Virus record (IMG/VR): IMGVR_UViG_3300005253_001115
Coordinates: 1 to 64,000 of that record
Reading direction: 5' to 3' (one strand)
DNA: 64,000 nucleotides
Shown here: positions 1,015-35,202 of the stretch, one piece after another
Layout of the letters: each line of letters begins with the position of its first letter
Numbering within the stretch: position 1 is the stretch's first letter
Translations under genes and position numbers: made by a program
Notes under the pieces: model-generated
Told to the model about the DNA's origin: nothing
The model's database searches: none
What the model saw: the letters and a program-made list of their open reading frames with translations, nothing else

Positions 1015-1018
1015 AGAT

Positions 1019-1088
1019 TAGCTGTGGCTCAGGATGAGCACTCCGGTCTTTAATCTGGAGAGGCAGGGTTCAATCCCCTGACAGTTGA
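1019..1088 (+). tRNA. tRNA-Pyl-like fold with 8-nt anticodon loop (TCTTTAAT)
   Basis: 7-bp acceptor, 1-nt linker, gctc-AGGAT-gagc D arm, 6-bp anticodon stem ctccgg/ctggag, 3-nt variable loop, caggg-TTCAATC-ccctg. Confidence 0.55.
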
Positions 1089-1090
1089 AC

Positions 1091-1105
1091 ACCGCGACAG
1101 GCGGT
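1091..1105 (+). repeat. GACAG hairpin copy 2
   Basis: accgc-GACAG-gcggt. Confidence 0.85.
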
Positions 1106-6066: not shown

Positions 6067-6143
6067 ACGGCTGTAGCATAACCGGAGAATGCCCCGCCCT
6101 GCGAAGGCGGAGATTGTAGGTTCGAATCCTATCAGCCGTGCCA
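6067..6143 (+). tRNA. tRNA-Arg(GCG)
   Basis: ccgcc-CT-GCG-AA-ggcgg, CCA. Confidence 0.9.
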
Positions 6144-6144
6144 C

Positions 6145-6247
6145 GTCGAACTGGAGATGCGGGTTGGATTCCCGCCAGTTGCGCGATTGCGGACTGTAGC
6201 ATAAATGACAAGAACCGCGACAGGCGGTTCGTGAGTGCGCCGTTCAC
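6145..6247 (+). ncRNA. Y RNA (YrlA-like) circularly permuted tRNA mimic with GACAG hairpin (copy 3, 6212-6230) in the D loop
   Basis: 5' GT(C)GAAC pairs with 3' GTTCAC leaving a bulged C; order is T arm, loop-closed acceptor-like stem, D arm. Confidence 0.75.
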
Positions 6248-6254
6248 TTTACAT

Positions 6255-6321
6255 AGGGCGGGATCTGGGATCAGCAGAGCCTCCAAAACTCAGCAGCGGG
6301 GTTCGATTCCTCGTCGCCCTG
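6255..6321 (+). tRNA. tRNA-Trp(CCA), atypical with minimal D arm
   Basis: CT-CCA-AA loop, gatc-tgg-gatc D arm, canonical T arm, G73. Confidence 0.7.
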
Positions 6322-12173: not shown

Positions 12174-12754
12174 GTCTGGTACCGCACAAGTGCAGATGTG
12201 GGCAGTGTTTTCTGGAGATGCCGGAGACAGTACCACAGTCCAGAGGAGGACTGTTTGACCAACTCATGGTGCTAACTGCGGTGGCTGGGCACTTACAGCG
12301 GTCAGGAGAGCATCATTCAGCAGAGACGATTATAGAGGTGCAGGACAAGCTTTACACTGGGCTAGCGGCTGCACTACGAAAGGCAGAAAAGGGGGCGATA
12401 GCTCAGCAGGGAGAGCGCTTGAATATTCAAGAGGTCCGGGGTTCGAGCCCCCGTCGCTCCACCATTATTTCTGACTTCTTGGCGTCACTTCGTATGTACG
12501 AGTTCAACGCGATGGATTGCGGGTCCAGGCGGGTAATAAAGCTGTCCGTGGACGATATTGAGAAAGATTTCCTCGATGAGCTAAAGTTTGTGGACCAACT
12601 TCCCGAAGATGGTATCACAGGAAGAGCCCTGGAGCTTGCGGACCTTGTGTCCGATATGATCTGGGGCGGAGCTAGAGGCTGGGAACGCGCAGATCAGGAG
12701 CAGTTTGAGCACTTGAAGCGTGAAGCCGGGAAGAGAATGAAAGTAACCAACTGA
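12170..12754 (+). CDS. hypothetical protein containing an in-frame tRNA-like insert
   Basis: 194-aa ORF stays open across 12392-12464. Confidence 0.6.
   Translation: MSLVPHKCRCGQCFLEMPETVPQSRGGLFDQLMVLTAVAGHLQRSGEHHSAETIIEVQDKLYTGLAAALRKAEKGAIAQQGERLNIQEVRGSSPRRSTIISDFLASLRMYEFNAMDCGSRRVIKLSVDDIEKDFLDELKFVDQLPEDGITGRALELADLVSDMIWGGARGWERADQEQFEHLKREAGKRMKVTN
12392..12464 (+). tRNA. tRNA-Ala with the anticodon precisely deleted
   Basis: cttgaat-attcaag versus cttgaat-GGC-attcaag in tRNA-Ala(GGC); G3.U70, D/T arms and ACCA intact. Confidence 0.85.
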
Positions 12755-13100: not shown

Positions 13101-13356
13101 CGGCTTATCCTTAGGCTGTAGAAGAAGCCGCGACAGGCGGCACAGACCGCCTCCAGAGGGGCTTCGAGGAAGGGAAATCCCGACAACAAAGTCCGCCCTG
13201 GTTGCGGAACCAATGTAGCTCGGTCAGTAGGCTTCCTTTTGTGCATGTAATGTGCATGTGGTCGCGACAGGCGACCGCGGTAATAACGATATTATGACCC
13301 AACAATACCCGCCAAGCCTCTCTACGATGCTCAAACCGGCGGGTTTTTGTTTTTTC
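13101..13356 (+). ncRNA. uncharacterised multi-hairpin RNA with GACAG hairpins copies 4 and 5 and a 3' terminator
   Basis: Hairpins at 13127-13141 and 13258-13278, several further helices, acccgcc/ggcgggt plus T-run. Confidence 0.6.
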
Positions 13357-13585: not shown

Positions 13586-14125
13586 ATGTCTGTTAAACGA
13601 GCGGTAGGTTATTGTGAGAAAGTGAACTGTGAGGACTACGCCAAGGGCGTATTCCTGCTCAACCACGGGGATACCTTCTACTGCCCCAGGTGCCGAGACA
13701 TAGGTGCTGTGGTAGCAGAGAGAGGCATCCATAGTGCAAAAGACGGTGTATCTTTCAAGGAAGTCAGGGTTGAATTCAACTACGACCCTATCAACAGACG
13801 TTTCAAAGAAATCGGTATCGTCCGAGACGAGTCGATCTGGGGCTCTGGCAGTACATACACGCTGCTCAGTCCTCTCATCAAGACCGAGAAGAGAGCCCTC
13901 AAGGTTGCAGAAGCGATCCTGGCCAATCTCCAGCGCTATGCAGACATTCTGGATGACGGCATTCCCAGAACCACCGAGACCATTGTATCTTTCGATGATG
14001 ATATCAGCGTCTTCACGGACAAGATGAGGCGTCTTGGTGCGGAGTGGGAGAACTCGAATCTCTCAATAAAAAGGCACGTCCGAGCGTGCAAGGATAAAGG
14101 GACTGCATGGCAAGAAATGGCATGA
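13586..14125 (+). CDS. hypothetical zinc-ribbon protein
   Basis: CEKVNC...CPRC; GGAG RBS. Confidence 0.7.
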   Translation: MSVKRAVGYCEKVNCEDYAKGVFLLNHGDTFYCPRCRDIGAVVAERGIHSAKDGVSFKEVRVEFNYDPINRRFKEIGIVRDESIWGSGSTYTLLSPLIKTEKRALKVAEAILANLQRYADILDDGIPRTTETIVSFDDDISVFTDKMRRLGAEWENSNLSIKRHVRACKDKGTAWQEMA

Positions 14126-20067: not shown

Positions 20068-20159
20068 CAAAGGTCATATCCCGGTCGCCAGAGAGGCGGT
20101 ACGGGTATCGCGACAGGCGATAAGGTAGGCTAGCGTTTGTATAGCCGGGAAGTTCTTTG
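20068..20159 (+). ncRNA. uncharacterised multibranch RNA carrying GACAG hairpin copy 6 (20106-20122)
   Basis: Outer caaagg/tctttg and tcccgg/ccggga helices; inner cgcc-AGAGA-ggcg and tatcgc-GACAG-gcgata. Confidence 0.55.
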
Positions 20160-20164
20160 CTCCC

Positions 20165-20239
20165 GGCCCTTATAACTCAATTGGCAGAGTGCCGGGCCTG
20201 AAGCCCGGATGTTGCAGGTTCGAGTCCTGCTAAGGGCCA
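20165..20239 (+). tRNA. atypical tRNA: 8-bp acceptor (His-like G-1:C73), loop CC-TGA-AG
   Basis: Perfect stems, no U33, no CCA. Confidence 0.6.
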
Positions 20240-20247
20240 CAGAGAGT

Positions 20248-20262
20248 GCCGCGACAGGCGGC
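20248..20262 (+). repeat. GACAG hairpin copy 7
   Basis: gccgc-GACAG-gcggc. Confidence 0.85.
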
Positions 20263-20360: not shown

Positions 20361-20380
20361 TTTGATTACGAAAGGATAAA

Positions 20381-20652
20381 CAGACGGGCGGACAATCGCT
20401 CCAAGGAGAGGAAAGTCGGGACTGCACGGTACAGCCTAGAGGGTAACACCCTTCCACCGTGAGGTGCGTGACGGCAACAGAGACGAGCCTATTTGGTTAG
20501 GTTGAAACGGGCGACAGCGTGGGCGCAGCAACCGAAAGCAGGGGACATTGATCGTACCAGAGAGTCCCCGGGTATCGGGCAAAGATTCTAGTGGTAACAC
20601 TAGAGCAAGACGAATGATTGTCGATAACAGAATCCCGCTTATAGCCCATCTG
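20381..20652 (+). ncRNA. rnpB: RNase P RNA (compact, bacterial type)
   Basis: GAGGAAAGTCGGGAC and AACAGAATCCCGCTTA (P4), GCAACAGAGA, TGAAACGG, terminal P1 cagacgggc/gcccatctg. Confidence 0.93.
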
Positions 20653-20670
20653 CAATTTTAGGAGAAGAAC

Positions 20671-21280: not shown

Positions 21281-21326
21281 CCGGGTGTAGCGCAGTCTGG
21301 TAGCGCGCCTGCTTTGGGAGCAGGAT
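21281..21326 (+). pseudogene. 5' half of tRNA-Pro(TGG), T arm and acceptor 3' strand lost
   Basis: D arm and cctgc-TT-TGG-GA-gcagg intact, then sequence switches. Confidence 0.8.
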
Positions 21327-21419
21327 TTGGGTGGCACTACTTGCCCAGAAAACTTACAGCCTTTGTGCCTTAATTGCCATAGAGACAAAACGGTACAGGA
21401 GTCGAAAAATAGAAAATGA
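21327..21419 (+). pseudogene. C-terminal remnant of an HNH endonuclease
   Basis: LGGTTCPENLQPLCLNCHRDKTVQESKNRK-stop, no start. Confidence 0.75.
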
Positions 21420-23929: not shown

Positions 23930-24017
23930 GGAGAGTTGCCAGAGAGGCCAAATGGGCTTGCTTGGAAAGCAATGCGCGGTAAAACGCACGGGGGTTCGAC
24001 TCCCCCACTCTCCGCCA
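23930..24017 (+). tRNA. tRNA-Ser(GGA)
   Basis: TT-GGA-AA, long variable arm, CCA. Confidence 0.92.
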
Positions 24018-24018
24018 C

Positions 24019-24116
24019 AATGAAGTCAGAAATCCGAGTTCGAGTCCCGGCGGGGATCTTACCGCGACAGGCGGTTGATGTTCCCTGTAGGTTAATTGGT
24101 AAACCACTGGCGCATT
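24019..24116 (+). ncRNA. second circularly permuted tRNA mimic (YrlA-like topology) with GACAG hairpin copy 8 (24061-24075) capping the acceptor-like stem
   Basis: gtcag..T arm (TTCGAGT)..cgggga/tccctg..ggtt-AATTGGTA-aacc D arm..ctggc. Confidence 0.75.
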
Positions 24117-24122
24117 TACAGA

Positions 24123-24155
24123 TGGGAGATTGGCTACCCGAGGAGCCAATCTCCC
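24123..24155. terminator. strong hairpin at the end of the tRNA array
   Basis: tgggagattggct/agccaatctccca 13-bp stem, no clear U-run. Confidence 0.5.
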
Positions 24156-24164
24156 ACAATAGAC

Positions 24165-24191
24165 TAAAGATCTCCTGACAGGTGCCGATGA
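24165..24191 (+). promoter_or_regulatory. sigma28-like promoter
   Basis: TAAA-N15-GCCGATGA. Confidence 0.65.
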
Positions 24192-24227
24192 GTATTGTAT
24201 ACTGTCACCAAATCACGGGAGACTCTA

Positions 24228-24590
24228 ATGAGCAAAAGACCGAAGATCAACCACCTGGCCCGGCTGGGCCTGGAACCCCACCCCCACAGCACGCATACCC
24301 TCGACAATGCGCGCAGGCGGGACGTTGAGATTCTAGGCCGTCGCTCTCGTAAGGAGTGGCCCTGTGCCGACCCCAAGTGCAGCGTAGGCTTCGACATTGA
24401 TCTTGACGAGGTGTACATCGAGCATTTCGTGGGAACCTCGCGGTACGGAGGTGAGCACTTCCAGTACCACGTTGCATGCGCAATCAATAAGCAGGTCGTT
24501 CGACCTGTAGAGGGTGCCATCGACAAGGGTAACAATCGCCGACAAGCAATTCAGGCGCAACGCGCACGAAAGGCAGCCAATGCTGGTTAG
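24228..24590 (+). CDS. hypothetical zinc-binding protein with C-terminal RRxAIxxQRAR tag
   Basis: CADPKC...YHVAC; ends NNRRQAIQAQRARKAANAG; GGAG RBS before ATG 24228. Confidence 0.7.
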   Translation: MSKRPKINHLARLGLEPHPHSTHTLDNARRRDVEILGRRSRKEWPCADPKCSVGFDIDLDEVYIEHFVGTSRYGGEHFQYHVACAINKQVVRPVEGAIDKGNNRRQAIQAQRARKAANAG

Positions 24591-27695: not shown

Positions 27696-28042
27696 GCAAA
27701 CCCAGTAGCAAACCTCTGGTTCGATGCACAGGGAAAGAGTGCTCCATTCACTGCCCACACAGCCTACCACATGAAAAGTGGGGCGAACTGAAGACATGTA
27801 CTCTCTGGGGAGAATGTTCAGAGAGTGAGAAAAAGATTCGTTGCGTGAAAGTGAAAGAAGGAGAACACGATGAATGACCGAAACTGTGCGGTCCGAGAGA
27901 GAATCGGAGACGGCGTTTCAGTTGGGCGCTGCTGGATTTACACAGACGAGGCTGAGGGTACTCTGACGTGCCCCAGACACGGAGATGTAACAAGTATTCA
28001 GAAGCGCTTCAGCGAGACTGGGGAGCTTGGAGAAGACCCGAG

Positions 28043-29272
28043 ATGAGTGACTACGACGTATTTCAGGGTGGCGTGCCGATCAAGGCATGGACGAAGGGCG
28101 TGCCGATTGAGTCGGCGGCTCTCGATCAGTTGAAGAATGTGGCGGCTCTGCCGTTCATTCACAAGTGGGTAGCAGTGATGCCGGACGTTCACTTCGGGCG
28201 TGGTGCTACCGTTGGCTCGGTCATTCCGACCAAGGGGGCTATCATTCCGGCGGCTGTCGGTGTGGACATTGGTTGCGGCATGGTCGCCGTGCGAACGGGA
28301 CTCGTGTCTCACGACCTTCCGACCAACTTGAAGAAGTGGCGTCTAGCTATCGAAGAGGCTGTGCCGCACGGCGCAGTCAAGGGTGCTTCCCACGATCGTG
28401 GCGGATTCTCTCCGGGCGCTCTTCCGAAGACGAACTCTCGTCTGTGGCAGAACAAGTTGGCGAATCGTTACGCTACCATTATGGGAAAGCACAAGTCGGT
28501 TGCTCACAAGGCTGGTCCACACCAGCTTGGTACGCTTGGGGGCGGTAACCACTTCATCGAGATTTGCCTGGATGAGGCGGATCGCGTGTGGCTGATGCTG
28601 CACTCGGGTAGCCGTGGCCTTGGCAACAAGATCGGAATGTACTTCACCGATCTGGCAAAGAAGGAGATGAAGATTCACTTCGTGAACTTGCCGGACAAGG
28701 ATCTTGCATATCTGCCGGAGGGTACGCAGCACTTCGATGACTACATCGAGGCGATGACGTGGGCGCAGGACTTTGCTCAGTTCAACCGCGACCTTATGGT
28801 TCTTCAGGTGTTCGATGCCTTGAAGCGCGAGGGCGGAGTTCCGCAGAAGAAGCTCTTGACTCACGATGTGGCAGTCAATTGCCATCACAATTACAGCGCT
28901 CGCGAGAACCACTACGGACAGAACGTGTGGCTCACTCGTAAGGGAGCAGTGTGCGCGCGCAAGGGCGTCATGGGAATCATCCCGGGTTCGATGGGTACCA
29001 AGTCCTTCATTGTAGAGGGCAAGGGTAACCCGGAGAGCTTTGACTCGTGCTCGCACGGGGCTGGTCGCATCATGAGCCGCTCGAAGGCAAAGAAGACGTT
29101 CACGCTGGACGACCACATCAAGGCAACGGAGGGGGTCGAGTGTCGCAAGGACGAAGGAGTCATTGATGAGACGCCGGGAGCTTATAAGGATATCGACGCT
29201 GTTATGGCAGCGCAGGCATCTTTGGTGGACATCAAGCATACGCTTCGTCAGGTGCTCTGTGTCAAGGGCTAA
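28043..29272 (+). CDS. rtcB: RtcB RNA 3'-phosphate/5'-OH ligase
   Basis: MPDVH, VGVDIGCG, GTLGGGNHF, HSGSRG, HHNY, SHGAGR and DETPGAYK motifs. Confidence 0.97.
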   Translation: MSDYDVFQGGVPIKAWTKGVPIESAALDQLKNVAALPFIHKWVAVMPDVHFGRGATVGSVIPTKGAIIPAAVGVDIGCGMVAVRTGLVSHDLPTNLKKWRLAIEEAVPHGAVKGASHDRGGFSPGALPKTNSRLWQNKLANRYATIMGKHKSVAHKAGPHQLGTLGGGNHFIEICLDEADRVWLMLHSGSRGLGNKIGMYFTDLAKKEMKIHFVNLPDKDLAYLPEGTQHFDDYIEAMTWAQDFAQFNRDLMVLQVFDALKREGGVPQKKLLTHDVAVNCHHNYSARENHYGQNVWLTRKGAVCARKGVMGIIPGSMGTKSFIVEGKGNPESFDSCSHGAGRIMSRSKAKKTFTLDDHIKATEGVECRKDEGVIDETPGAYKDIDAVMAAQASLVDIKHTLRQVLCVKG

Positions 29273-32091: not shown

Positions 32092-35000
32092 TTAGGGTCG
32101 AGGCTCCTGCTCGTACTCGATCGGCATACCAGCGGACTGGATGAGCTGCTGAACGCGGGCGAACAGGTCGTCGGCACCGTCGTGCTCGGAGGACTTGTCC
32201 AGAGCCTCCAGACGGGGCGTGATACCAAGTAGCCACTCGGGAGGACCGTCAATCACGATTCCGCCGTGACGCTCGAACCTGTGGCTCCTGAGGGCCATAA
32301 TTGCCGGACTTACTTCCTCGAAAAGGGGGCTCATGATTACGATACGCTCCCCCACGGGACCCTTAGGATCGACCGCAATAGCCATTTTCTGGTTTGGCAT
32401 TAGCGGTTGAACCTGCTTCTGTTCGACATTTGCGTCATCGTCAGCTTGGATGGGGTCGATCGGAACTTCTCGCTCGTTTCTGTGATTCACGGATGGTCCT
32501 ATTCCCGGGCGTTCCTCTTCCAGAGGAGTGCTGTATTCCTTCGGGAAGATGGCGTCGATGTCCATCAGGTCTTCCATAGTTCGCGCCGCTTCCGTGGCTG
32601 CGGGGTAAATGTTCTCTTCGGGCTCCTCGATACTCATGAAGCCAGACTTCTTGCCTGTAAAGTCCATGTCCCAGTACGGACGGATCTTGGTGCCGCCACC
32701 ACGACCGCCTCGTCCCCGCTCTCCGTGATTCATGTCATCACCGCCCGGATTTTGTCCGCCGGGTCCATGCATGTTCGTGGGGTCGAGAGTTGAAGTAGCT
32801 TTGTCTGCATCGTCGTGGTCGTCGTAGAAATCAGGGTGCTCCACAAGATGATCCTTAGTCACCTCCTTAGCTATGCCTCTATCTACACCGTGTTCCCACA
32901 CTTCAATATCTGTGCCTGTCTTTAGCGCCTCGGGGTCGAAGGCAGAATCCGGCATGCCATCAGCCCTACCGCCAGGAAGCAGCTCTTCTTGAGCGCAAGC
33001 CTTGAACATGTTGCGCTCTGGGTCCGGGTAGTTCTGTACGGGCAGGAATCCTGTCTCTTGGTCTGCACCACGAGGCTTAATCATCGGGGCACGGTCGAGA
33101 CCGCCGCCACCTGGCTTACGAACTATCTGTCCGGGGAAGCTGGAGGGAGGGGACTCTTCGGCACTTCTAGTGGGGGACGGGTGCGGAGTGGAAGTCTCGG
33201 GCATCTGTGGCAACGGAAGCTCTACAGGCAAGAAGCCCCGGTCCTTGTTGTTGGGTGTCTCGTATGCTTCAGCAGGGTCGCCTTCCCAGTCCGGGAAGAC
33301 ACCGGTTTCTGGTGTCATGCCGTTCGGGCTGGGCTCAAGCTCCTCCATTTGGTGCGGCGTAGACCCGCCGAACCCGTCACGGCCAAGAGGCCCTTCTAGG
33401 GGATGGTTCGAGAATCTAGATCCTCGATCGAAGTCCTTGACGCCGGGATACTCTTCGGCGCGCTTGTGTAGGCGCTGGGGCTCCGCCGTGGCTAGGCCCG
33501 GATGCTGGGATTCACCCTTCTTGTCAGCGGGCCACTCGTAAAGATTCCACAAGAGGAAATCATCTTGCGTCTTGTCTGGGTCTGTTCGGAATGAGCTAGG
33601 GCCTACACCTGTGCCGAATACTCCGCTCTTGGTGTTACCCTTCTTGCGCTCTTCTCTATAGTTCCCGTCGAAGCATTCTTCACCTTCGCGGATATGCGAG
33701 TCCCCACATTCATTCATGTTCTTCTCCTGAGAACCGCCCTCCTCCGAGCGGTCCTTCAAAAAACGAGTAGCCAATTCGATCAGCTTGTCCGGGTCTGTTA
33801 TTGCTGTCTCGTCCTCAATCGAACGAGTCAGAGCCAGGAACTTGCCCATATCGGGTCCGGGCTTGAAGCCCTTCGCGATTAGGTGCTTACCCGAAACAGA
33901 GTCTACCAGCTTCCCGCCTGGGGCAGCTACAGAAGTGACATGCTGGTGGTAGTCCTCAAGGAACTTGTCCTGGGAACTTACGTCCCTGCGCAGGGCTTCC
34001 TCGGTTGTTCTGCCCAACACATCAGCCTTCGACAAGGCCGCAAGCAGCTCGGGGCTAACATCGGCATCACCCAATGTGCGACCCAGCTTCCTGTAGCCTT
34101 TGCGGCCACTGGTTCCGGGAAGGATCGCCGGGCGCAAGTGGGTATCAACTAGAGTCTCAACCTGCTTAATTAGAGCCAGTGGTGCTTTCATCCTGCCCAA
34201 GAACGCGCGAGTAGGCTCGATGCCAGCCTCTTCGTGTCCACGGGAGGTAATGTACCCGTCGATCTCCTCAGTAGAGACCGGCTTTCCAAAGTCGTGTGCC
34301 AGAGCCCCAAGCATTAGGGGGAGATCGAACGCAGGATCGCCAGTGCGCTGTTTTGCAGCCTCATCGAGAACCAGCAGGGTGTGGACGTAAACGTCCCCCT
34401 CGGGGTGCCACTTAGGTTCCTGCGGAACACCCAGTAGCGCCTCGATCTCCGGGAAGTAGCGGAGCAGGTTTGCCTGATGCAGCACCTCAATTCCCTTACT
34501 CGGTTTTTGGCCCTTTAGGAGCATCTTGGAGAACTCCGGCAGGATACGCTCACCCGGGAGCTGCTCAAGCGGCTGTGCGGCCACGAGTTGAAGTGTCTGG
34601 GGGTCTACATCAAAGTCAAAACGCGCAGCGAACTGGGCCACTCTGAGGGCTCGTAACGGGTCGTCAGAGAACGTGTTGACATCTGCGGCACGCAGGATTC
34701 CTGCCTTGAGGTCAGCGACACCGTTTAAGGGGTCAATGATCTCGTCTGTTAAAGGGTCTTTCGAAAGGGCGTTGATCGTGAGATCGCGCCTGCGGGCAGC
34801 GTCTTCCACGCTCATGGTAGGATCAGGAATTACATCAAAGCCTTTGTGCCCCTCTCCGGTCTTCTTCTCGCGGCGAGGGAGTGCAACGTCCCAGTCAAGC
34901 TCTTGGATGTTCAGCACGCCGAACTGCTGTCCGACCTCTTTTACATTACCAAACCGGGAAAGGATCTCGTTGACCTTCTCCATGGGGAGACCGAAGACCT

Positions 35001-35202
35001 CGAAGTCCACGTCTTTGCTTGGGAGGCCGAGTAGCTCATCTCGCACGATGCCCCCGACGAGCAAGGCTACCCCTCCCGCGCCTTCAACAGCGCGTGCGAA
35101 TGCCTCGACCAGAGCTTTTTCATTCGGATTCACGAGAATATTCCTGTATTTCTTCCTCATCCGCATAGCGGCTATGTGTGCGAATCCTGTGGCAATTTGC
35201 AC
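32092..35202 (-). CDS. cca: CCA tRNA nucleotidyltransferase (class II + HD domain) fused to ~550-aa acidic/Pro-rich extension
   Basis: VGGIVRD, DVDFE, RRDLTINA, DDPLRALR, HPEGDV, HDFGK. Confidence 0.9.
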   Translation of the reverse strand: MQIATGFAHIAAMRMRKKYRNILVNPNEKALVEAFARAVEGAGGVALLVGGIVRDELLGLPSKDVDFEVFGLPMEKVNEILSRFGNVKEVGQQFGVLNIQELDWDVALPRREKKTGEGHKGFDVIPDPTMSVEDAARRRDLTINALSKDPLTDEIIDPLNGVADLKAGILRAADVNTFSDDPLRALRVAQFAARFDFDVDPQTLQLVAAQPLEQLPGERILPEFSKMLLKGQKPSKGIEVLHQANLLRYFPEIEALLGVPQEPKWHPEGDVYVHTLLVLDEAAKQRTGDPAFDLPLMLGALAHDFGKPVSTEEIDGYITSRGHEEAGIEPTRAFLGRMKAPLALIKQVETLVDTHLRPAILPGTSGRKGYRKLGRTLGDADVSPELLAALSKADVLGRTTEEALRRDVSSQDKFLEDYHQHVTSVAAPGGKLVDSVSGKHLIAKGFKPGPDMGKFLALTRSIEDETAITDPDKLIELATRFLKDRSEEGGSQEKNMNECGDSHIREGEECFDGNYREERKKGNTKSGVFGTGVGPSSFRTDPDKTQDDFLLWNLYEWPADKKGESQHPGLATAEPQRLHKRAEEYPGVKDFDRGSRFSNHPLEGPLGRDGFGGSTPHQMEELEPSPNGMTPETGVFPDWEGDPAEAYETPNNKDRGFLPVELPLPQMPETSTPHPSPTRSAEESPPSSFPGQIVRKPGGGGLDRAPMIKPRGADQETGFLPVQNYPDPERNMFKACAQEELLPGGRADGMPDSAFDPEALKTGTDIEVWEHGVDRGIAKEVTKDHLVEHPDFYDDHDDADKATSTLDPTNMHGPGGQNPGGDDMNHGERGRGGRGGGTKIRPYWDMDFTGKKSGFMSIEEPEENIYPAATEAARTMEDLMDIDAIFPKEYSTPLEEERPGIGPSVNHRNEREVPIDPIQADDDANVEQKQVQPLMPNQKMAIAVDPKGPVGERIVIMSPLFEEVSPAIMALRSHRFERHGGIVIDGPPEWLLGITPRLEALDKSSEHDGADDLFARVQQLIQSAGMPIEYEQEPRP

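What the first reader, a model, noticed from the sequence alone, without database searches (positions are those of the whole stretch)
24019..24116. Second circularly permuted tRNA mimic with the tag hairpin at a different site
Seen: the T arm precedes the D arm, both loops are canonical (TTCGAGT; AATTGGTA), and the acceptor-like stem is capped by the GACAG hairpin. The end stem lacks the bulged-C Ro motif. The same hairpin at two different positions in two mimics shows that it is a movable module.
Basis: partly seen in the sequence, partly recalled or inferred. Interest (0 to 1): 0.7.

Follow-up and report, generated by a model that had tools for sequence, protein, structure and literature searches.

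The report
Permuted tRNA-like RNA in a jumbo phage
A marine-sediment jumbo phage carries, inside its tRNA gene array, a conserved small RNA gene that folds like a tRNA whose two halves are swapped and whose anticodon loop is missing, capped by a short hairpin that the phage reuses in at least eight other places. It resembles bacterial Y-RNA-like tRNA mimics, but the protein those normally serve (Ro60) and its binding motif are absent.

Summary
Window 24019-24116 is a circularly permuted tRNA body. In order it has a closing stem, a 4-nt variable region, a T arm (loop TTCGAGT), an acceptor-like stem capped by ACCGC-GACAG-GCGGT, U8A9, a D arm (loop AATTGGTA) and the closing stem again.

When the halves are re-joined with an artificial anticodon loop, ARAGORN calls a normal cloverleaf; it does so for 0 of 1000 shuffled controls. 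The unit sits directly after tRNA-Ser(GGA) in the tRNA array of a 266-kb phage.

It is kept in a second phage record (G001) and in at least four further metagenomic lineages. The substitutions preserve the structure. Identity between the two phages is 81.5%, against a median of 80.4% for 26 orthologous tRNAs. The tRNA-Asn next door decays.

The tag core CGCGACAGGCG occurs 9 times in this genome and 7 times in the 28-kb tRNA region of G001, always on the transcribed strand, with covarying flanks. One copy lies in the D loop of a second mimic (about 6150-6245).

The architecture is that of YrlA. However, the Ro motif, a Ro60 gene and the Rfam threshold all fail. I read it as a Ro-independent, YrlA-type tRNA mimic that carries a clade-specific recognition hairpin. 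Function and expression are unproven.

The parts
23930..24017 (+). tRNA-Ser(GGA) with encoded CCA, directly upstream. Its 3' processing would set the 5' end of the mimic.
   Evidence: Rfam tRNA 46.9 bits; ARAGORN.
24019..24029 (+). 5' strand of the closing stem: outer AATG 24019-22, internal loop AA, inner GUCAG 24025-29, which stands for the 3' strand of an anticodon stem.
   Evidence: Sequence. 24026 U>C turns G.U into G-C in relatives and G001. The outer 4 bp are not conserved in G001.
24030..24033 (+). Variable region AAAU; its last base U48 can pair with A15.
   Evidence: Positions 24030 and 24032 vary and take an insertion in relatives, while the final U is invariant.
24034..24050 (+). 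T arm CCGAG-UUCGAGU-CCCGG.
   Evidence: Sequence. The loop is invariant in all lineages. 24037 A>G restores a G-C pair, and 24034 C>U gives U.G.
24051..24058 (+). 3' strand of the acceptor-like stem (CGGGGAU) plus a discriminator-like C.
   Evidence: Pair 24056/24082 is A-U here and G-C in X4B, X5 and the marine lineage. Pair 24057/24081 is U.U here, U.G in X4B/X5, G-C in the marine lineage and A-U in G001.
24061..24075 (+). Tag hairpin ACCGC-GACAG-GCGGU capping the acceptor-like stem.
   Evidence: The core CGCGACAGGCG is exact in all lineages. The outer pairs covary: CCGC/GCGG, GAUCGC/GCGAUC, GGAUCGC/GCGAUCU.
24080..24089 (+). G(-1), the 5' strand of the acceptor-like stem (UUCCCUG), then U8 A9. 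The predicted RNase P site lies between 24080 and 24081.
   Evidence: Sequence. The cleavage prediction is an inference from M. smegmatis YrlA (PMC4201824).
24090..24106 (+). D arm GGUU-AAUUGGUA-AACC and position 26.
   Evidence: Sequence. Invariant except loop position 20 in G001 and 24106 A>G.
24107..24116 (+). 3' strand of the closing stem: CUGGC, G, CAUU.
   Evidence: Sequence. The conserved block ends at 24117-24126 in relatives.
24124..24155 (+). 12-bp hairpin that is the relic of a tRNA-Asn(GUU) with a paired leader and trailer. It marks the 3' side of the unit.
   Evidence: The tRNA is intact in L028, X7 and X10, has lost its T loop in G001, has lost its interior here, and is absent in an X8/X9 variant.
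24175..24203 (+). Sigma-70-like promoter CTGACA-17-TATACT for the next gene (24228-24590). The mimic therefore ends the upstream transcription unit.
   Evidence: Best promoter-like site in the region, 10 of 12; conserved in relatives.
6150..6245 (+). The other permuted tRNA-like unit (the 'first mimic'). T arm GCGGG-UUGGAUU-CCCGC, a capped acceptor-like stem, and a D stem GCAU/GUGC whose loop carries the tag hairpin (core 6216-6226).
   Evidence: R1 covariance-model hit of 23.3 bits; sequence. The G001 ortholog has a fully compensated acceptor stem and a C-G to U-A change in the D stem.
1093..1103 (+). Tag core, 3 nt after the 3' end of an uncalled tRNA-like unit.
13129..13139 (+). Tag core, 33 nt after tRNA-Met.
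13263..13273 (+). Tag core, 35 nt before the abiF RNA motif.
20109..20119 (+). Tag core in the spacer after tRNA-Asn.
20250..20260 (+). Tag core, 9 nt after an unusual CCA-less tRNA.
20380..20657 (+). Phage-encoded bacterial type-A RNase P RNA; candidate processing enzyme for the unit.
   Evidence: Rfam RF00010, 149.4 bits.
27968..29272 (+). RtcB RNA ligase, 4 kb downstream.
   Evidence: Pfam PF01139, 426 bits.
34690..35064 (-). Head domain of the CCA-adding / poly(A) polymerase family, inside a 1037-aa open frame.
   Evidence: PF01743, 72.2 bits.

Best explanation
The element is the gene of a small non-coding RNA of the YrlA architectural type: a tRNA body with its halves swapped and its ends where the anticodon loop would be. 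It has neither the Ro60-binding motif nor a Ro60 partner gene.

Inferred steps:
1. It is transcribed as part of the phage tRNA array.
2. It is cut out by the enzymes that mature its tRNA neighbours.
3. It folds into an L-shaped tRNA-like body with an intact D-loop/T-loop elbow.
4. It presents, at the end of a 7-8-bp acceptor-like helix, the clade-specific hairpin CGC-GACAG-GCG. That hairpin is the recognition site of an unidentified factor.
5. Because the acceptor-like helix is full length, RNase P probably cuts 5' of position 24081. The phage encodes its own RNase P RNA. Cleavage would leave a two-piece tRNA-like RNA whose 3' side carries the tag, as happens with Mycobacterium smegmatis YrlA.

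The likely role is that of an adaptor or decoy. It would link or sequester proteins that recognise the tRNA shape, together with the tag-binding factor.

Shown: the fold pattern, its conservation, and the modular reuse of the tag. Inferred: transcription, processing, the binding partner and the role.
For: - Anatomy: the structure and tertiary-contact bases are present. ARAGORN calls the re-permuted construct a tRNA in both the window and G001 versions and, for the window version at default settings, against 0 of 1000 shuffles.
- Orthologs: one lies in phage record G001 at the same place after tRNA-Ser(GGA). Further variants occur in four metagenome studies.
- Substitutions keep or improve pairing: G.U to G-C in the closing stem, C-G to U.G and A.C to G-C in the T stem, A-U to G-C at 24056/24082. 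The 24057/24081 pair takes three standard pair types plus the window's U.U.
- The T loop, D arm, U8A9 and tag core are invariant.
- Identity between G000 and G001 is 81.5%, against a median of 80.4% for 26 orthologous tRNAs.
- The MFE of three reconstructed relatives is the permuted cloverleaf.
- The adjacent tRNA-Asn decays or is lost while the mimic is kept.
- No paralogous donor tRNA exists in either phage.
- Tag: 16 copies in the two phages, all on the transcribed strand. The 4th stem pair forms in 16 of 16 copies with four pair types (p about 1.5e-7), and the 5th in 12 of 16.
- A second and a third permuted unit occupy other slots of the arrays.
- The genome encodes RNase P RNA, RtcB and a CCA-adding-type enzyme.
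- Precedent: a YrlA with a 7-bp acceptor stem is cut by RNase P and receives CCA (PMC4201824).
Against: - There is no expression evidence; only DNA runs hold the region.
- This genome's copy has an A.C and a U.U mismatch. Its MFE is not the cloverleaf, and its z-score is only -0.8 to -0.9.
- G001 has two unpaired positions in the acceptor-like stem.
- Only about six lineages are known, most of them closely related. Three variants were rebuilt from difference tables rather than read as sequences.
- No tag-binding protein is identified.
- The Rfam YrlA model scores the unit at 20.6 bits. That is no better than tandem-tRNA junctions, which score 18-32 bits.
- The role as adaptor or decoy rests on analogy only.
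Confidence: 0.6

Rival explanations
1. Scaffold reading. The functional unit is the tag hairpin. The tRNA-like body only serves as a nuclease-resistant, correctly processed carrier that displays it, in the way engineered tRNA scaffolds carry inserted RNAs. The partners of the body itself would be irrelevant.
For: The tag is the most strictly conserved part. It is present in every lineage of this unit, in the D loop of the other mimic, and in seven non-mimic contexts, including mRNA intergenic regions.
Against: Most tags do without a tRNA-like carrier. The elbow-forming loops are as invariant as the tag, which a mere carrier would not need. A third permuted unit in G001 has no tag.
Confidence: 0.15
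2. Non-functional relic. A tandemly duplicated tRNA lost its outer halves, and the remaining 3' half, spacer hairpin and 5' half still look like a permuted tRNA.
For: The arrays of these phages do contain decaying tRNAs: the tRNA-Asn relic at 24124-24155, a truncated tRNA-Pro at 21281-21349, and a T-loop deletion in G001. This copy carries two mismatches and has no significant folding z-score. There are no expression data.
Against: The unit is kept in all lineages seen while the neighbouring tRNA-Asn is lost. Changes are compensatory or pair-improving. It is as conserved as real tRNAs. No donor paralog exists. Two further permuted units have their own compensated orthologs.
Confidence: 0.14
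3. True permuted tRNA gene. The ends would be joined by RtcB, and the tag-containing insert removed by RNase P, 3' trimming and CCA addition. The product would be a decoding tRNA, as in the permuted tRNA genes of Cyanidioschyzon.
For: RtcB, RNase P RNA and a CCA-adding-type enzyme are encoded. No tRNA-His, Asp, Trp, Tyr or Cys is found in this record. In G001 a 3+4-nt join of the flanks would read UUGUGAU, a His-type loop. The window and close relatives have G(-1):C73.
Against: The flanks are not conserved between lineages. In the window no join with two or more 3'-flank bases gives U33, and neither does a 0- or 1-base join. G(-1):C73 is absent in G001 and in the marine lineage. I saw no bulge-helix-bulge motif. 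The sister unit at 6150-6245 has a non-canonical T loop and a tag inside its D loop. The record is 89% complete and starts inside the array, so the missing tRNAs may lie off the contig.
Confidence: 0.06
4. Artefact. Either the T arm of one tRNA and the D arm of the next are read together (the known false positive of YrlA searches), or the order is an assembly error.
For: The YrlA and R1 models do hit tandem-tRNA junctions in this window and elsewhere.
Against: There is no tRNA body on either side: 16 nt separate tRNA-Ser from the T arm, and nothing tRNA-like follows the D arm. The two acceptor strands and the two closing strands pair with each other. The same order appears in independent assemblies from several studies.
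Confidence: 0.02

Closest known systems
YrlA, bacterial and mycobacteriophage Y-RNA-like tRNA mimics (Rfam RF02553; Chen et al. 2014, PMC4201824)
   Same: The order is the same: T arm, acceptor-like stem-loop, D arm, with the RNA ends closing the structure where the anticodon stem would be. The tRNA tertiary-contact bases are conserved. YrlA also occurs in phages. In M. smegmatis it has a full-length acceptor stem that RNase P cuts.
   Different: There is no GNCGAAN0-1G Ro motif. No Ro60 (TROVE) gene is found in either phage record. The unit scores 20.6 bits against a threshold of 69. It is embedded in a tRNA array rather than next to rsr. Its acceptor cap is a clade-specific hairpin that also occurs outside the mimics.
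Circularly permuted tRNA genes of Cyanidioschyzon merolae and some green algae (recalled knowledge; mentioned in papers listed)
   Same: The 3' half precedes the 5' half, and an intervening sequence links the acceptor 3' and 5' strands.
   Different: Those genes yield decoding tRNAs through a circular intermediate, and their ends rebuild a loop at a bulge-helix-bulge motif. Here no conserved anticodon loop can be rebuilt, and no such motif is seen.
Two-piece (permuted) tmRNA of alpha-proteobacteria and cyanobacteria
   Same: The gene order is permuted, with the T arm and acceptor 3' strand ahead of the acceptor 5' strand. The intervening loop is removed to give a two-piece tRNA-like domain.
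   Different: There is no tag reading frame, no pseudoknots and no CCA after the discriminator. ARAGORN, which detects permuted tmRNA, finds none.
boxB-type pentaloop hairpins of lambdoid phages (recalled, for the tag only; a lead, not a test)
   Same: A short GC-rich stem with a 5-nt loop beginning GACA, on the transcribed strand, presumably read by a protein.
   Different: The last loop base is G, not A, so the GNRA-like fold is doubtful. There are nine copies per genome, some inside structured RNAs. No N-like protein is identified.

Membership tests
YrlA (RF02553; Chen et al. 2014) | T arm, then acceptor-like stem-loop, then D arm, closed by pairing of the RNA ends | tested here: met
   Sequence; ARAGORN on the re-permuted construct; the MFE of relatives gives this fold.
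YrlA (RF02553; Chen et al. 2014) | Bases for tRNA tertiary contacts (8-14, 15-48, 18/19-55/56, 54-58) | tested here: met
   U8, A14, A15/U48, G18G19, U54U55C56, A58 are present and invariant across lineages.
YrlA (RF02553; Chen et al. 2014) | GNCGAAN0-1G Ro60-binding motif near the 5' end | tested here: not met
   The 5' region CCACAAUGAAGUCAG has no such motif, and nor does G001. Definition taken from PMC4201824.
YrlA (RF02553; Chen et al. 2014) | Encoded within about 4 kb of a Ro60/Rsr (TROVE) gene on the same strand | tested here: not met
   PF05731 finds nothing in G000 (266 kb, 89% complete) or G001. The controls were positive.
YrlA (RF02553; Chen et al. 2014) | Score at or above the Rfam gathering threshold | tested here: not met
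   20.6 bits against 69, over model positions 30-81 only. Tandem-tRNA junctions score 18-32 bits.
YrlA (RF02553; Chen et al. 2014) | Bound by Ro60; modified by TruB and DusA | not testable with these tools
   Needs biochemistry.
tRNA (RF00005) | Contiguous cloverleaf with a 7-nt anticodon loop | tested here: not met
   Neither Rfam nor ARAGORN calls it in the native order. It is called only after re-permutation with an artificial loop.
Permuted tRNA gene (Cyanidioschyzon type) | 3' half upstream of the 5' half, with an insert between the acceptor strands | tested here: met
   Sequence.
Permuted tRNA gene (Cyanidioschyzon type) | Ends that rebuild a conserved anticodon loop (U33, anticodon) at a processing motif | tested here: not met
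   The flanks differ between lineages. No join in the window gives U33. No bulge-helix-bulge motif is seen.
Permuted tRNA gene (Cyanidioschyzon type) | Circular RNA intermediate | not testable with these tools
   No RNA runs hold the region.
Two-piece tmRNA | Tag-peptide reading frame and pseudoknots between the tRNA-like halves; detection by ARAGORN | tested here: not met
   ARAGORN finds no tmRNA. The unit has only about 100 nt.

The most novel reading that the evidence does not exclude
The clade has a Ro-independent counterpart of the Y RNA system. A dedicated, still unknown RNA-binding factor would read the CGC-GACAG-GCG tag on a set of phage RNAs: two or three permuted tRNA mimics, tRNA trailers, an abiF-antitoxin-like RNA and two mRNA spacers. 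The tRNA-shaped mimics would act as adaptors or decoys. They would couple that factor to tRNA-recognising machinery (the phage RNase P RNA, the CCA-adding enzyme, RtcB), or soak up host tRNA-targeting defence nucleases. Lacking an anticodon loop, the mimics could not be cut by anticodon nucleases.
Probability: 0.2. Interest if true: 0.8.

Novelty: new variant of a known kind. Interest (0 to 1): 0.6.

Why it matters
tRNA-shaped Y-like RNAs have so far been defined by their link to Ro60, and the job of their tRNA-like domain is still unknown. Here the same architecture is conserved without Ro60 and without the Ro motif. It sits inside the tRNA array of a phage that also carries its own RNase P RNA, RtcB and a CCA-adding-type enzyme.

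This suggests that the tRNA-like domain has a function of its own. It also offers a simpler system in which to find that function. The recurrent tag hairpin gives an experimental handle, as bait for the partner protein. It further hints at a phage-specific way of marking a set of small RNAs, possibly connected with defence and counter-defence around tRNAs.

Tried and rejected
- Cultured relatives: megablast of 8 kb and blastn of the 98-nt unit against 50,697 phage records gave only tRNA hits or nothing.
- IMG/VR DNA patterns: three patterns found only one related record, G001.
- IMG/VR neighbour proteins: searches with two of them again found only G001.
- Metagenome scan: it gave one identical contig and four relatives whose upstream region differs or is cut off. 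An exact-protein look-up added nothing.
- Tag 15-mer in IMG/VR: 88 single hits with no tRNA nearby, except in G001.
- T-loop-plus-tag pattern in 185,579 prokaryote genomes: only chance hits and tandem-tRNA junctions by the R1 model.
- Pseudomonas phage D6: it has the same layout of tRNA array followed by RtcB, but no mimic.
- attP-like copy of a host tRNA 3' end: rejected, because the matching 5' half is also present.
- tRNA-His-like identity (G-1:C73): not conserved in G001 or the marine lineage.
- tmRNA: rejected.
- Rfam on the distal tag region at 250.5-256.5 kb: no hit.
- Complementarity between the tag loop and the RNase P RNA: one 6-nt match inside a helix, judged to be chance (sequence).
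- Not attempted: I made no tool alignment of the reconstructed metagenome variants, because they have no reference id. Pair counts were done in a script instead.

Full report
**Setting**

The window is the first 64 kb of a 266,640-bp virus record (IMG/VR, linear, estimated 89% complete). The DNA comes from marine sediment metagenomes.

The first 24 kb is an array of 33 tRNA genes, all on the + strand. Small ORFs and non-coding elements are interspersed. These include a bacterial type-A RNase P RNA at 20380-20657 (149 bits) and an abiF RNA motif at 13308-13344 (59 bits). RtcB lies at 27968-29272. A CCA-adding/poly(A)-polymerase head domain lies at 34690-35064 on the - strand. No RNase P protein gene and no TROVE/Ro60 gene were found.

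**The observation**

In order these are the closing stem, the variable region AAAU, the T arm, the acceptor-like stem with its tag-hairpin cap, U8A9, the D arm and A26.

The bases that make the tRNA tertiary contacts are all present. tRNA-Ser(GGA) ends with its CCA at 24017, one base before the unit.

When the two halves are re-joined with an artificial anticodon loop, ARAGORN draws an ordinary 75-nt cloverleaf for this copy and for the ortholog in the second phage. It calls the window construct at default settings as well, while 0 of 1000 dinucleotide-shuffled constructs are called.

In native order neither Rfam tRNA nor ARAGORN reports anything here. The known false positive of YrlA searches is the T arm of one tRNA read with the D arm of the next. 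It is excluded because there is no room for a tRNA body on either side.

This copy has two weak points: an A.C mismatch in the T stem and a U.U at the top of the acceptor-like stem. Its predicted MFE (-29.7 kcal/mol, z about -0.9) is not the cloverleaf, which scores -28.0.

**Relatives**

IMG/VR holds only one related record, G001 (184 kb). It has the same unit in the same place after tRNA-Ser(GGA). An identical contig exists in GenBank metagenomes (L026).

Laying Logan contigs of eight public DNA runs on the region gave further variants:
- two in a 2019 sediment study (X4A, X4B);
- one in a 2024 sediment study (X5);
- variants in a 2020 sediment run (X10);
- a marine-water lineage (X6-X9).

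I rebuilt X4A, X4B and X5 from the difference tables in a script. They are reconstructions, not read sequences.

The changes, by position:

| Position(s) | Change | Effect |
|---|---|---|
| 24026 | U>C | G.U to G-C in the closing stem |
| 24034 | C>U | C-G to U.G in the T stem |
| 24037 | A>G | removes the A.C mismatch; the window is the odd one out |
| 24051 | C>U | C-G to U.G |
| 24056 with 24082 | A>G with U>C | compensatory, A-U to G-C |
| 24057/24081 | see below | four states across lineages |

The top pair 24057/24081 is U.U in the window, U.G in X4B/X5, G-C in the marine lineage and A-U in G001.

The remaining changes fall in the variable region, in the linkers around the tag, and at position 26. 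The T loop, D stem, D loop (except position 20 in G001), U8A9 and the 11-nt tag core never change.

In the three reconstructed relatives the unconstrained MFE structure is the permuted cloverleaf itself, including the outer closing stem, at -37.6 to -40.0 kcal/mol. Their z-scores are -1.5 to -2.0.

Between G000 and G001 the unit is 81.5% identical. The median for 26 orthologous tRNAs is 80.4%, with a range of 59-92%. Two neighbouring proteins are 65% and 74% identical.

There is a natural control next door. The hairpin at 24124-24155 is the relic of a tRNA-Asn(GUU). That tRNA is intact in L028, X7 and X10. It has lost its T loop in G001 and its whole interior in the window, and it is absent in an X8/X9 variant. 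The mimic is kept in all of these lineages.

Neither half has a close paralog among the tRNAs of either phage. It is therefore not a recent rearrangement of a neighbour.

**The tag hairpin**

The exact 11-mer CGCGACAGGCG occurs nine times in the genome, where about 0.13 is expected from length; the reversed control occurs 0 times. Seven copies are on the + strand in the first 24 kb. Two are on the - strand at 252.7 and 253.9 kb, between ORFs of that strand.

G001 has seven copies in its 28-kb tRNA region, six of them at positions orthologous to G000 sites.

Across the 16 copies the fourth stem pair is always formed, with four different pair types (p about 1.5e-7 against random flanks). The fifth pair is formed in 12 of 16. 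It is therefore a hairpin with an invariant 3-bp core and pentaloop and a free outer stem. That is the signature of a specifically recognised RNA element.

Its contexts differ:
- the cap of the acceptor-like stem here;
- the D loop of another permuted tRNA-like unit at about 6150-6245;
- 3-33 nt after tRNAs or tRNA-like units (1093, 13129, 20250; also after tRNA-Cys in G001);
- in front of the abiF-type RNA (13263);
- a spacer after tRNA-Asn (20109);
- two mRNA spacers.

In every lineage of the present unit the tag is at the same place, while its outer stem and linkers differ.

The 15-mer version of the tag is not enriched or tRNA-linked in any other IMG/VR record. A T-loop-plus-tag pattern finds only chance hits and tRNA dimers in prokaryote genomes. 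The tag is clade-specific as far as these collections show.

**Other permuted units**

I built a covariance model, R1, from the window and G001 copies. It recovers the unit at 6139-6258 (23 bits) and its G001 ortholog.

The G001 ortholog's acceptor-like stem is entirely different in sequence but still paired. Its D stem carries a C-G to U-A change.

G001 has a third unit without a tag, filling the spacer between tRNA-Pro(GGG) and tRNA-Lys(CUU) (34 bits).

All three occupy tRNA slots in the arrays, starting a few bases after the CCA of the preceding tRNA.

**Mechanism**

Shown:
- a tRNA-shaped fold pattern without an anticodon loop;
- conservation like that of a tRNA;
- a conserved recognition hairpin on its acceptor end;
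- co-orientation with the tRNA array;
- a strong promoter-like site only downstream, at 24175-24203.

Inferred: the RNA is co-transcribed with the upstream ORFs and tRNA-Ser, and is released by tRNA 3' processing on one side and by processing of the tRNA-Asn leader helix on the other.

The acceptor-like helix has 7 bp, or 8 with G-1:C73 in this sub-lineage. The published precedent therefore applies. [quoted passage not shown] I therefore predict a cut between 24080 and 24081 by host RNase P or by the phage's own RNase P RNA. The product would be a two-piece tRNA-like RNA.

What the RNA then does is not known. By analogy with Y RNAs, the best guess is an adaptor or decoy that combines two recognition surfaces, the tRNA elbow and acceptor helix and the tag.

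**Comparison with known families**

The architecture is that of YrlA. Membership fails on the defining points that can be tested:
- there is no GNCGAAN0-1G motif (definition; sequence);
- there is no TROVE gene in either phage record;
- the Rfam score is 20.6 bits against a threshold of 69, over the tRNA-like part only.

That score is within the range the model gives to tandem-tRNA junctions (18-32 bits).

It is not a tRNA, and it is not a tmRNA.

It is unlikely to be a Cyanidioschyzon-type permuted tRNA gene. The flanks are not conserved, no join in the window gives U33, and the His-like G-1:C73 pair is not conserved.

**Verdict**

The unit is best described as a Ro-independent, YrlA-type permuted tRNA mimic carrying a clade-specific modular hairpin: a new variant of a known kind.

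Three weaknesses remain: the lack of any expression data, the small number of mostly close relatives, and the unknown partner of the tag.

Noticed in passing
window 20380-20657 (+): A phage-encoded bacterial type-A RNase P RNA (149 bits). It is shortened, about 278 nt against a 367-position model, with part of the specificity domain missing. No RNase P protein gene is found in the record. I found no mention of RNase P in the huge-phage survey I checked.
   Followed up: partly
window 13263-13350 (+): A small unit made of a tag hairpin followed by an abiF RNA motif (RF03085, 59.4 bits) that doubles as a U-tailed terminator. Pfam finds no AbiF-type domain in the next large ORF (13586-14125). It may be an antitoxin-RNA decoy against host AbiF abortive infection. 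It is conserved in G001.
   Followed up: partly
window 24124-24155 (+); L006 1437-1340 (-); L028 1-110: This hairpin is what remains of a tRNA-Asn(GUU). In intact copies the 5' leader (GGGAGAUUGGC in G001; a shorter AAUUGGC in L028) pairs with the discriminator, CCA and trailer. In G001 this prolongs the acceptor stem to an 18-bp helix, possibly an RNase III-type processing stem. The tRNA is intact, damaged or gone in different lineages.
   Followed up: partly
window 6150-6245 (+) and 6257-6320 (+): This is the other permuted tRNA-like unit. It has a non-canonical T loop (UUGGAUU) and the tag inside its D loop. A further uncalled tRNA-like segment follows directly, and then an ORF of the RNaseH_like family PF04308 (6355-6912).
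   Followed up: partly
window about 1018-1090 (+): A tRNA-like unit not called by ARAGORN or Rfam. It has a 6-bp anticodon stem, an 8-nt loop (UCUUUAAU) and no CCA. A tag hairpin lies 3 nt after its 3' end.
   Followed up: no
window 20165-20240 (+) and 12392-12464 (+): Two unusual tRNAs. The first has C33, anticodon UGA, a short variable arm and no encoded CCA, with a tag 9 nt downstream. The second is called by ARAGORN with a two-base 'anticodon'.
   Followed up: no
window 21281-21349 (+): A truncated tRNA-Pro-like gene (29.1 bits) that appears to lack a T arm. It is another sign of turnover in the array.
   Followed up: no
window 34690-35064 (-): A CCA-adding/poly(A)-polymerase head domain inside an open frame of 1037 aa, far longer than ordinary CCA-adding enzymes.
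   Followed up: no
L031 5848-5751 (-), phage record G001: A third permuted tRNA-like unit without a tag. It has a 6-bp closing stem (AGUCAG/CUGACU) and fills the spacer between tRNA-Pro(GGG) and tRNA-Lys(CUU). It is absent from this window.
   Followed up: partly
L006 3060-2990 and 2885-2815 (-), phage record G001: Two copies of a roughly 70-nt non-coding repeat beginning UCCUGAACGGGCG lie between tRNA genes. It has no known family.
   Followed up: no
window 252683-252693 and 253885-253895 of the whole record (- strand; L123 2184-2194 and 3386-3396): Two tag hairpins lie far from the tRNA array, between ORFs of the - strand. The first is followed by a terminator-like hairpin. There are no Rfam hits in the region.
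   Followed up: partly
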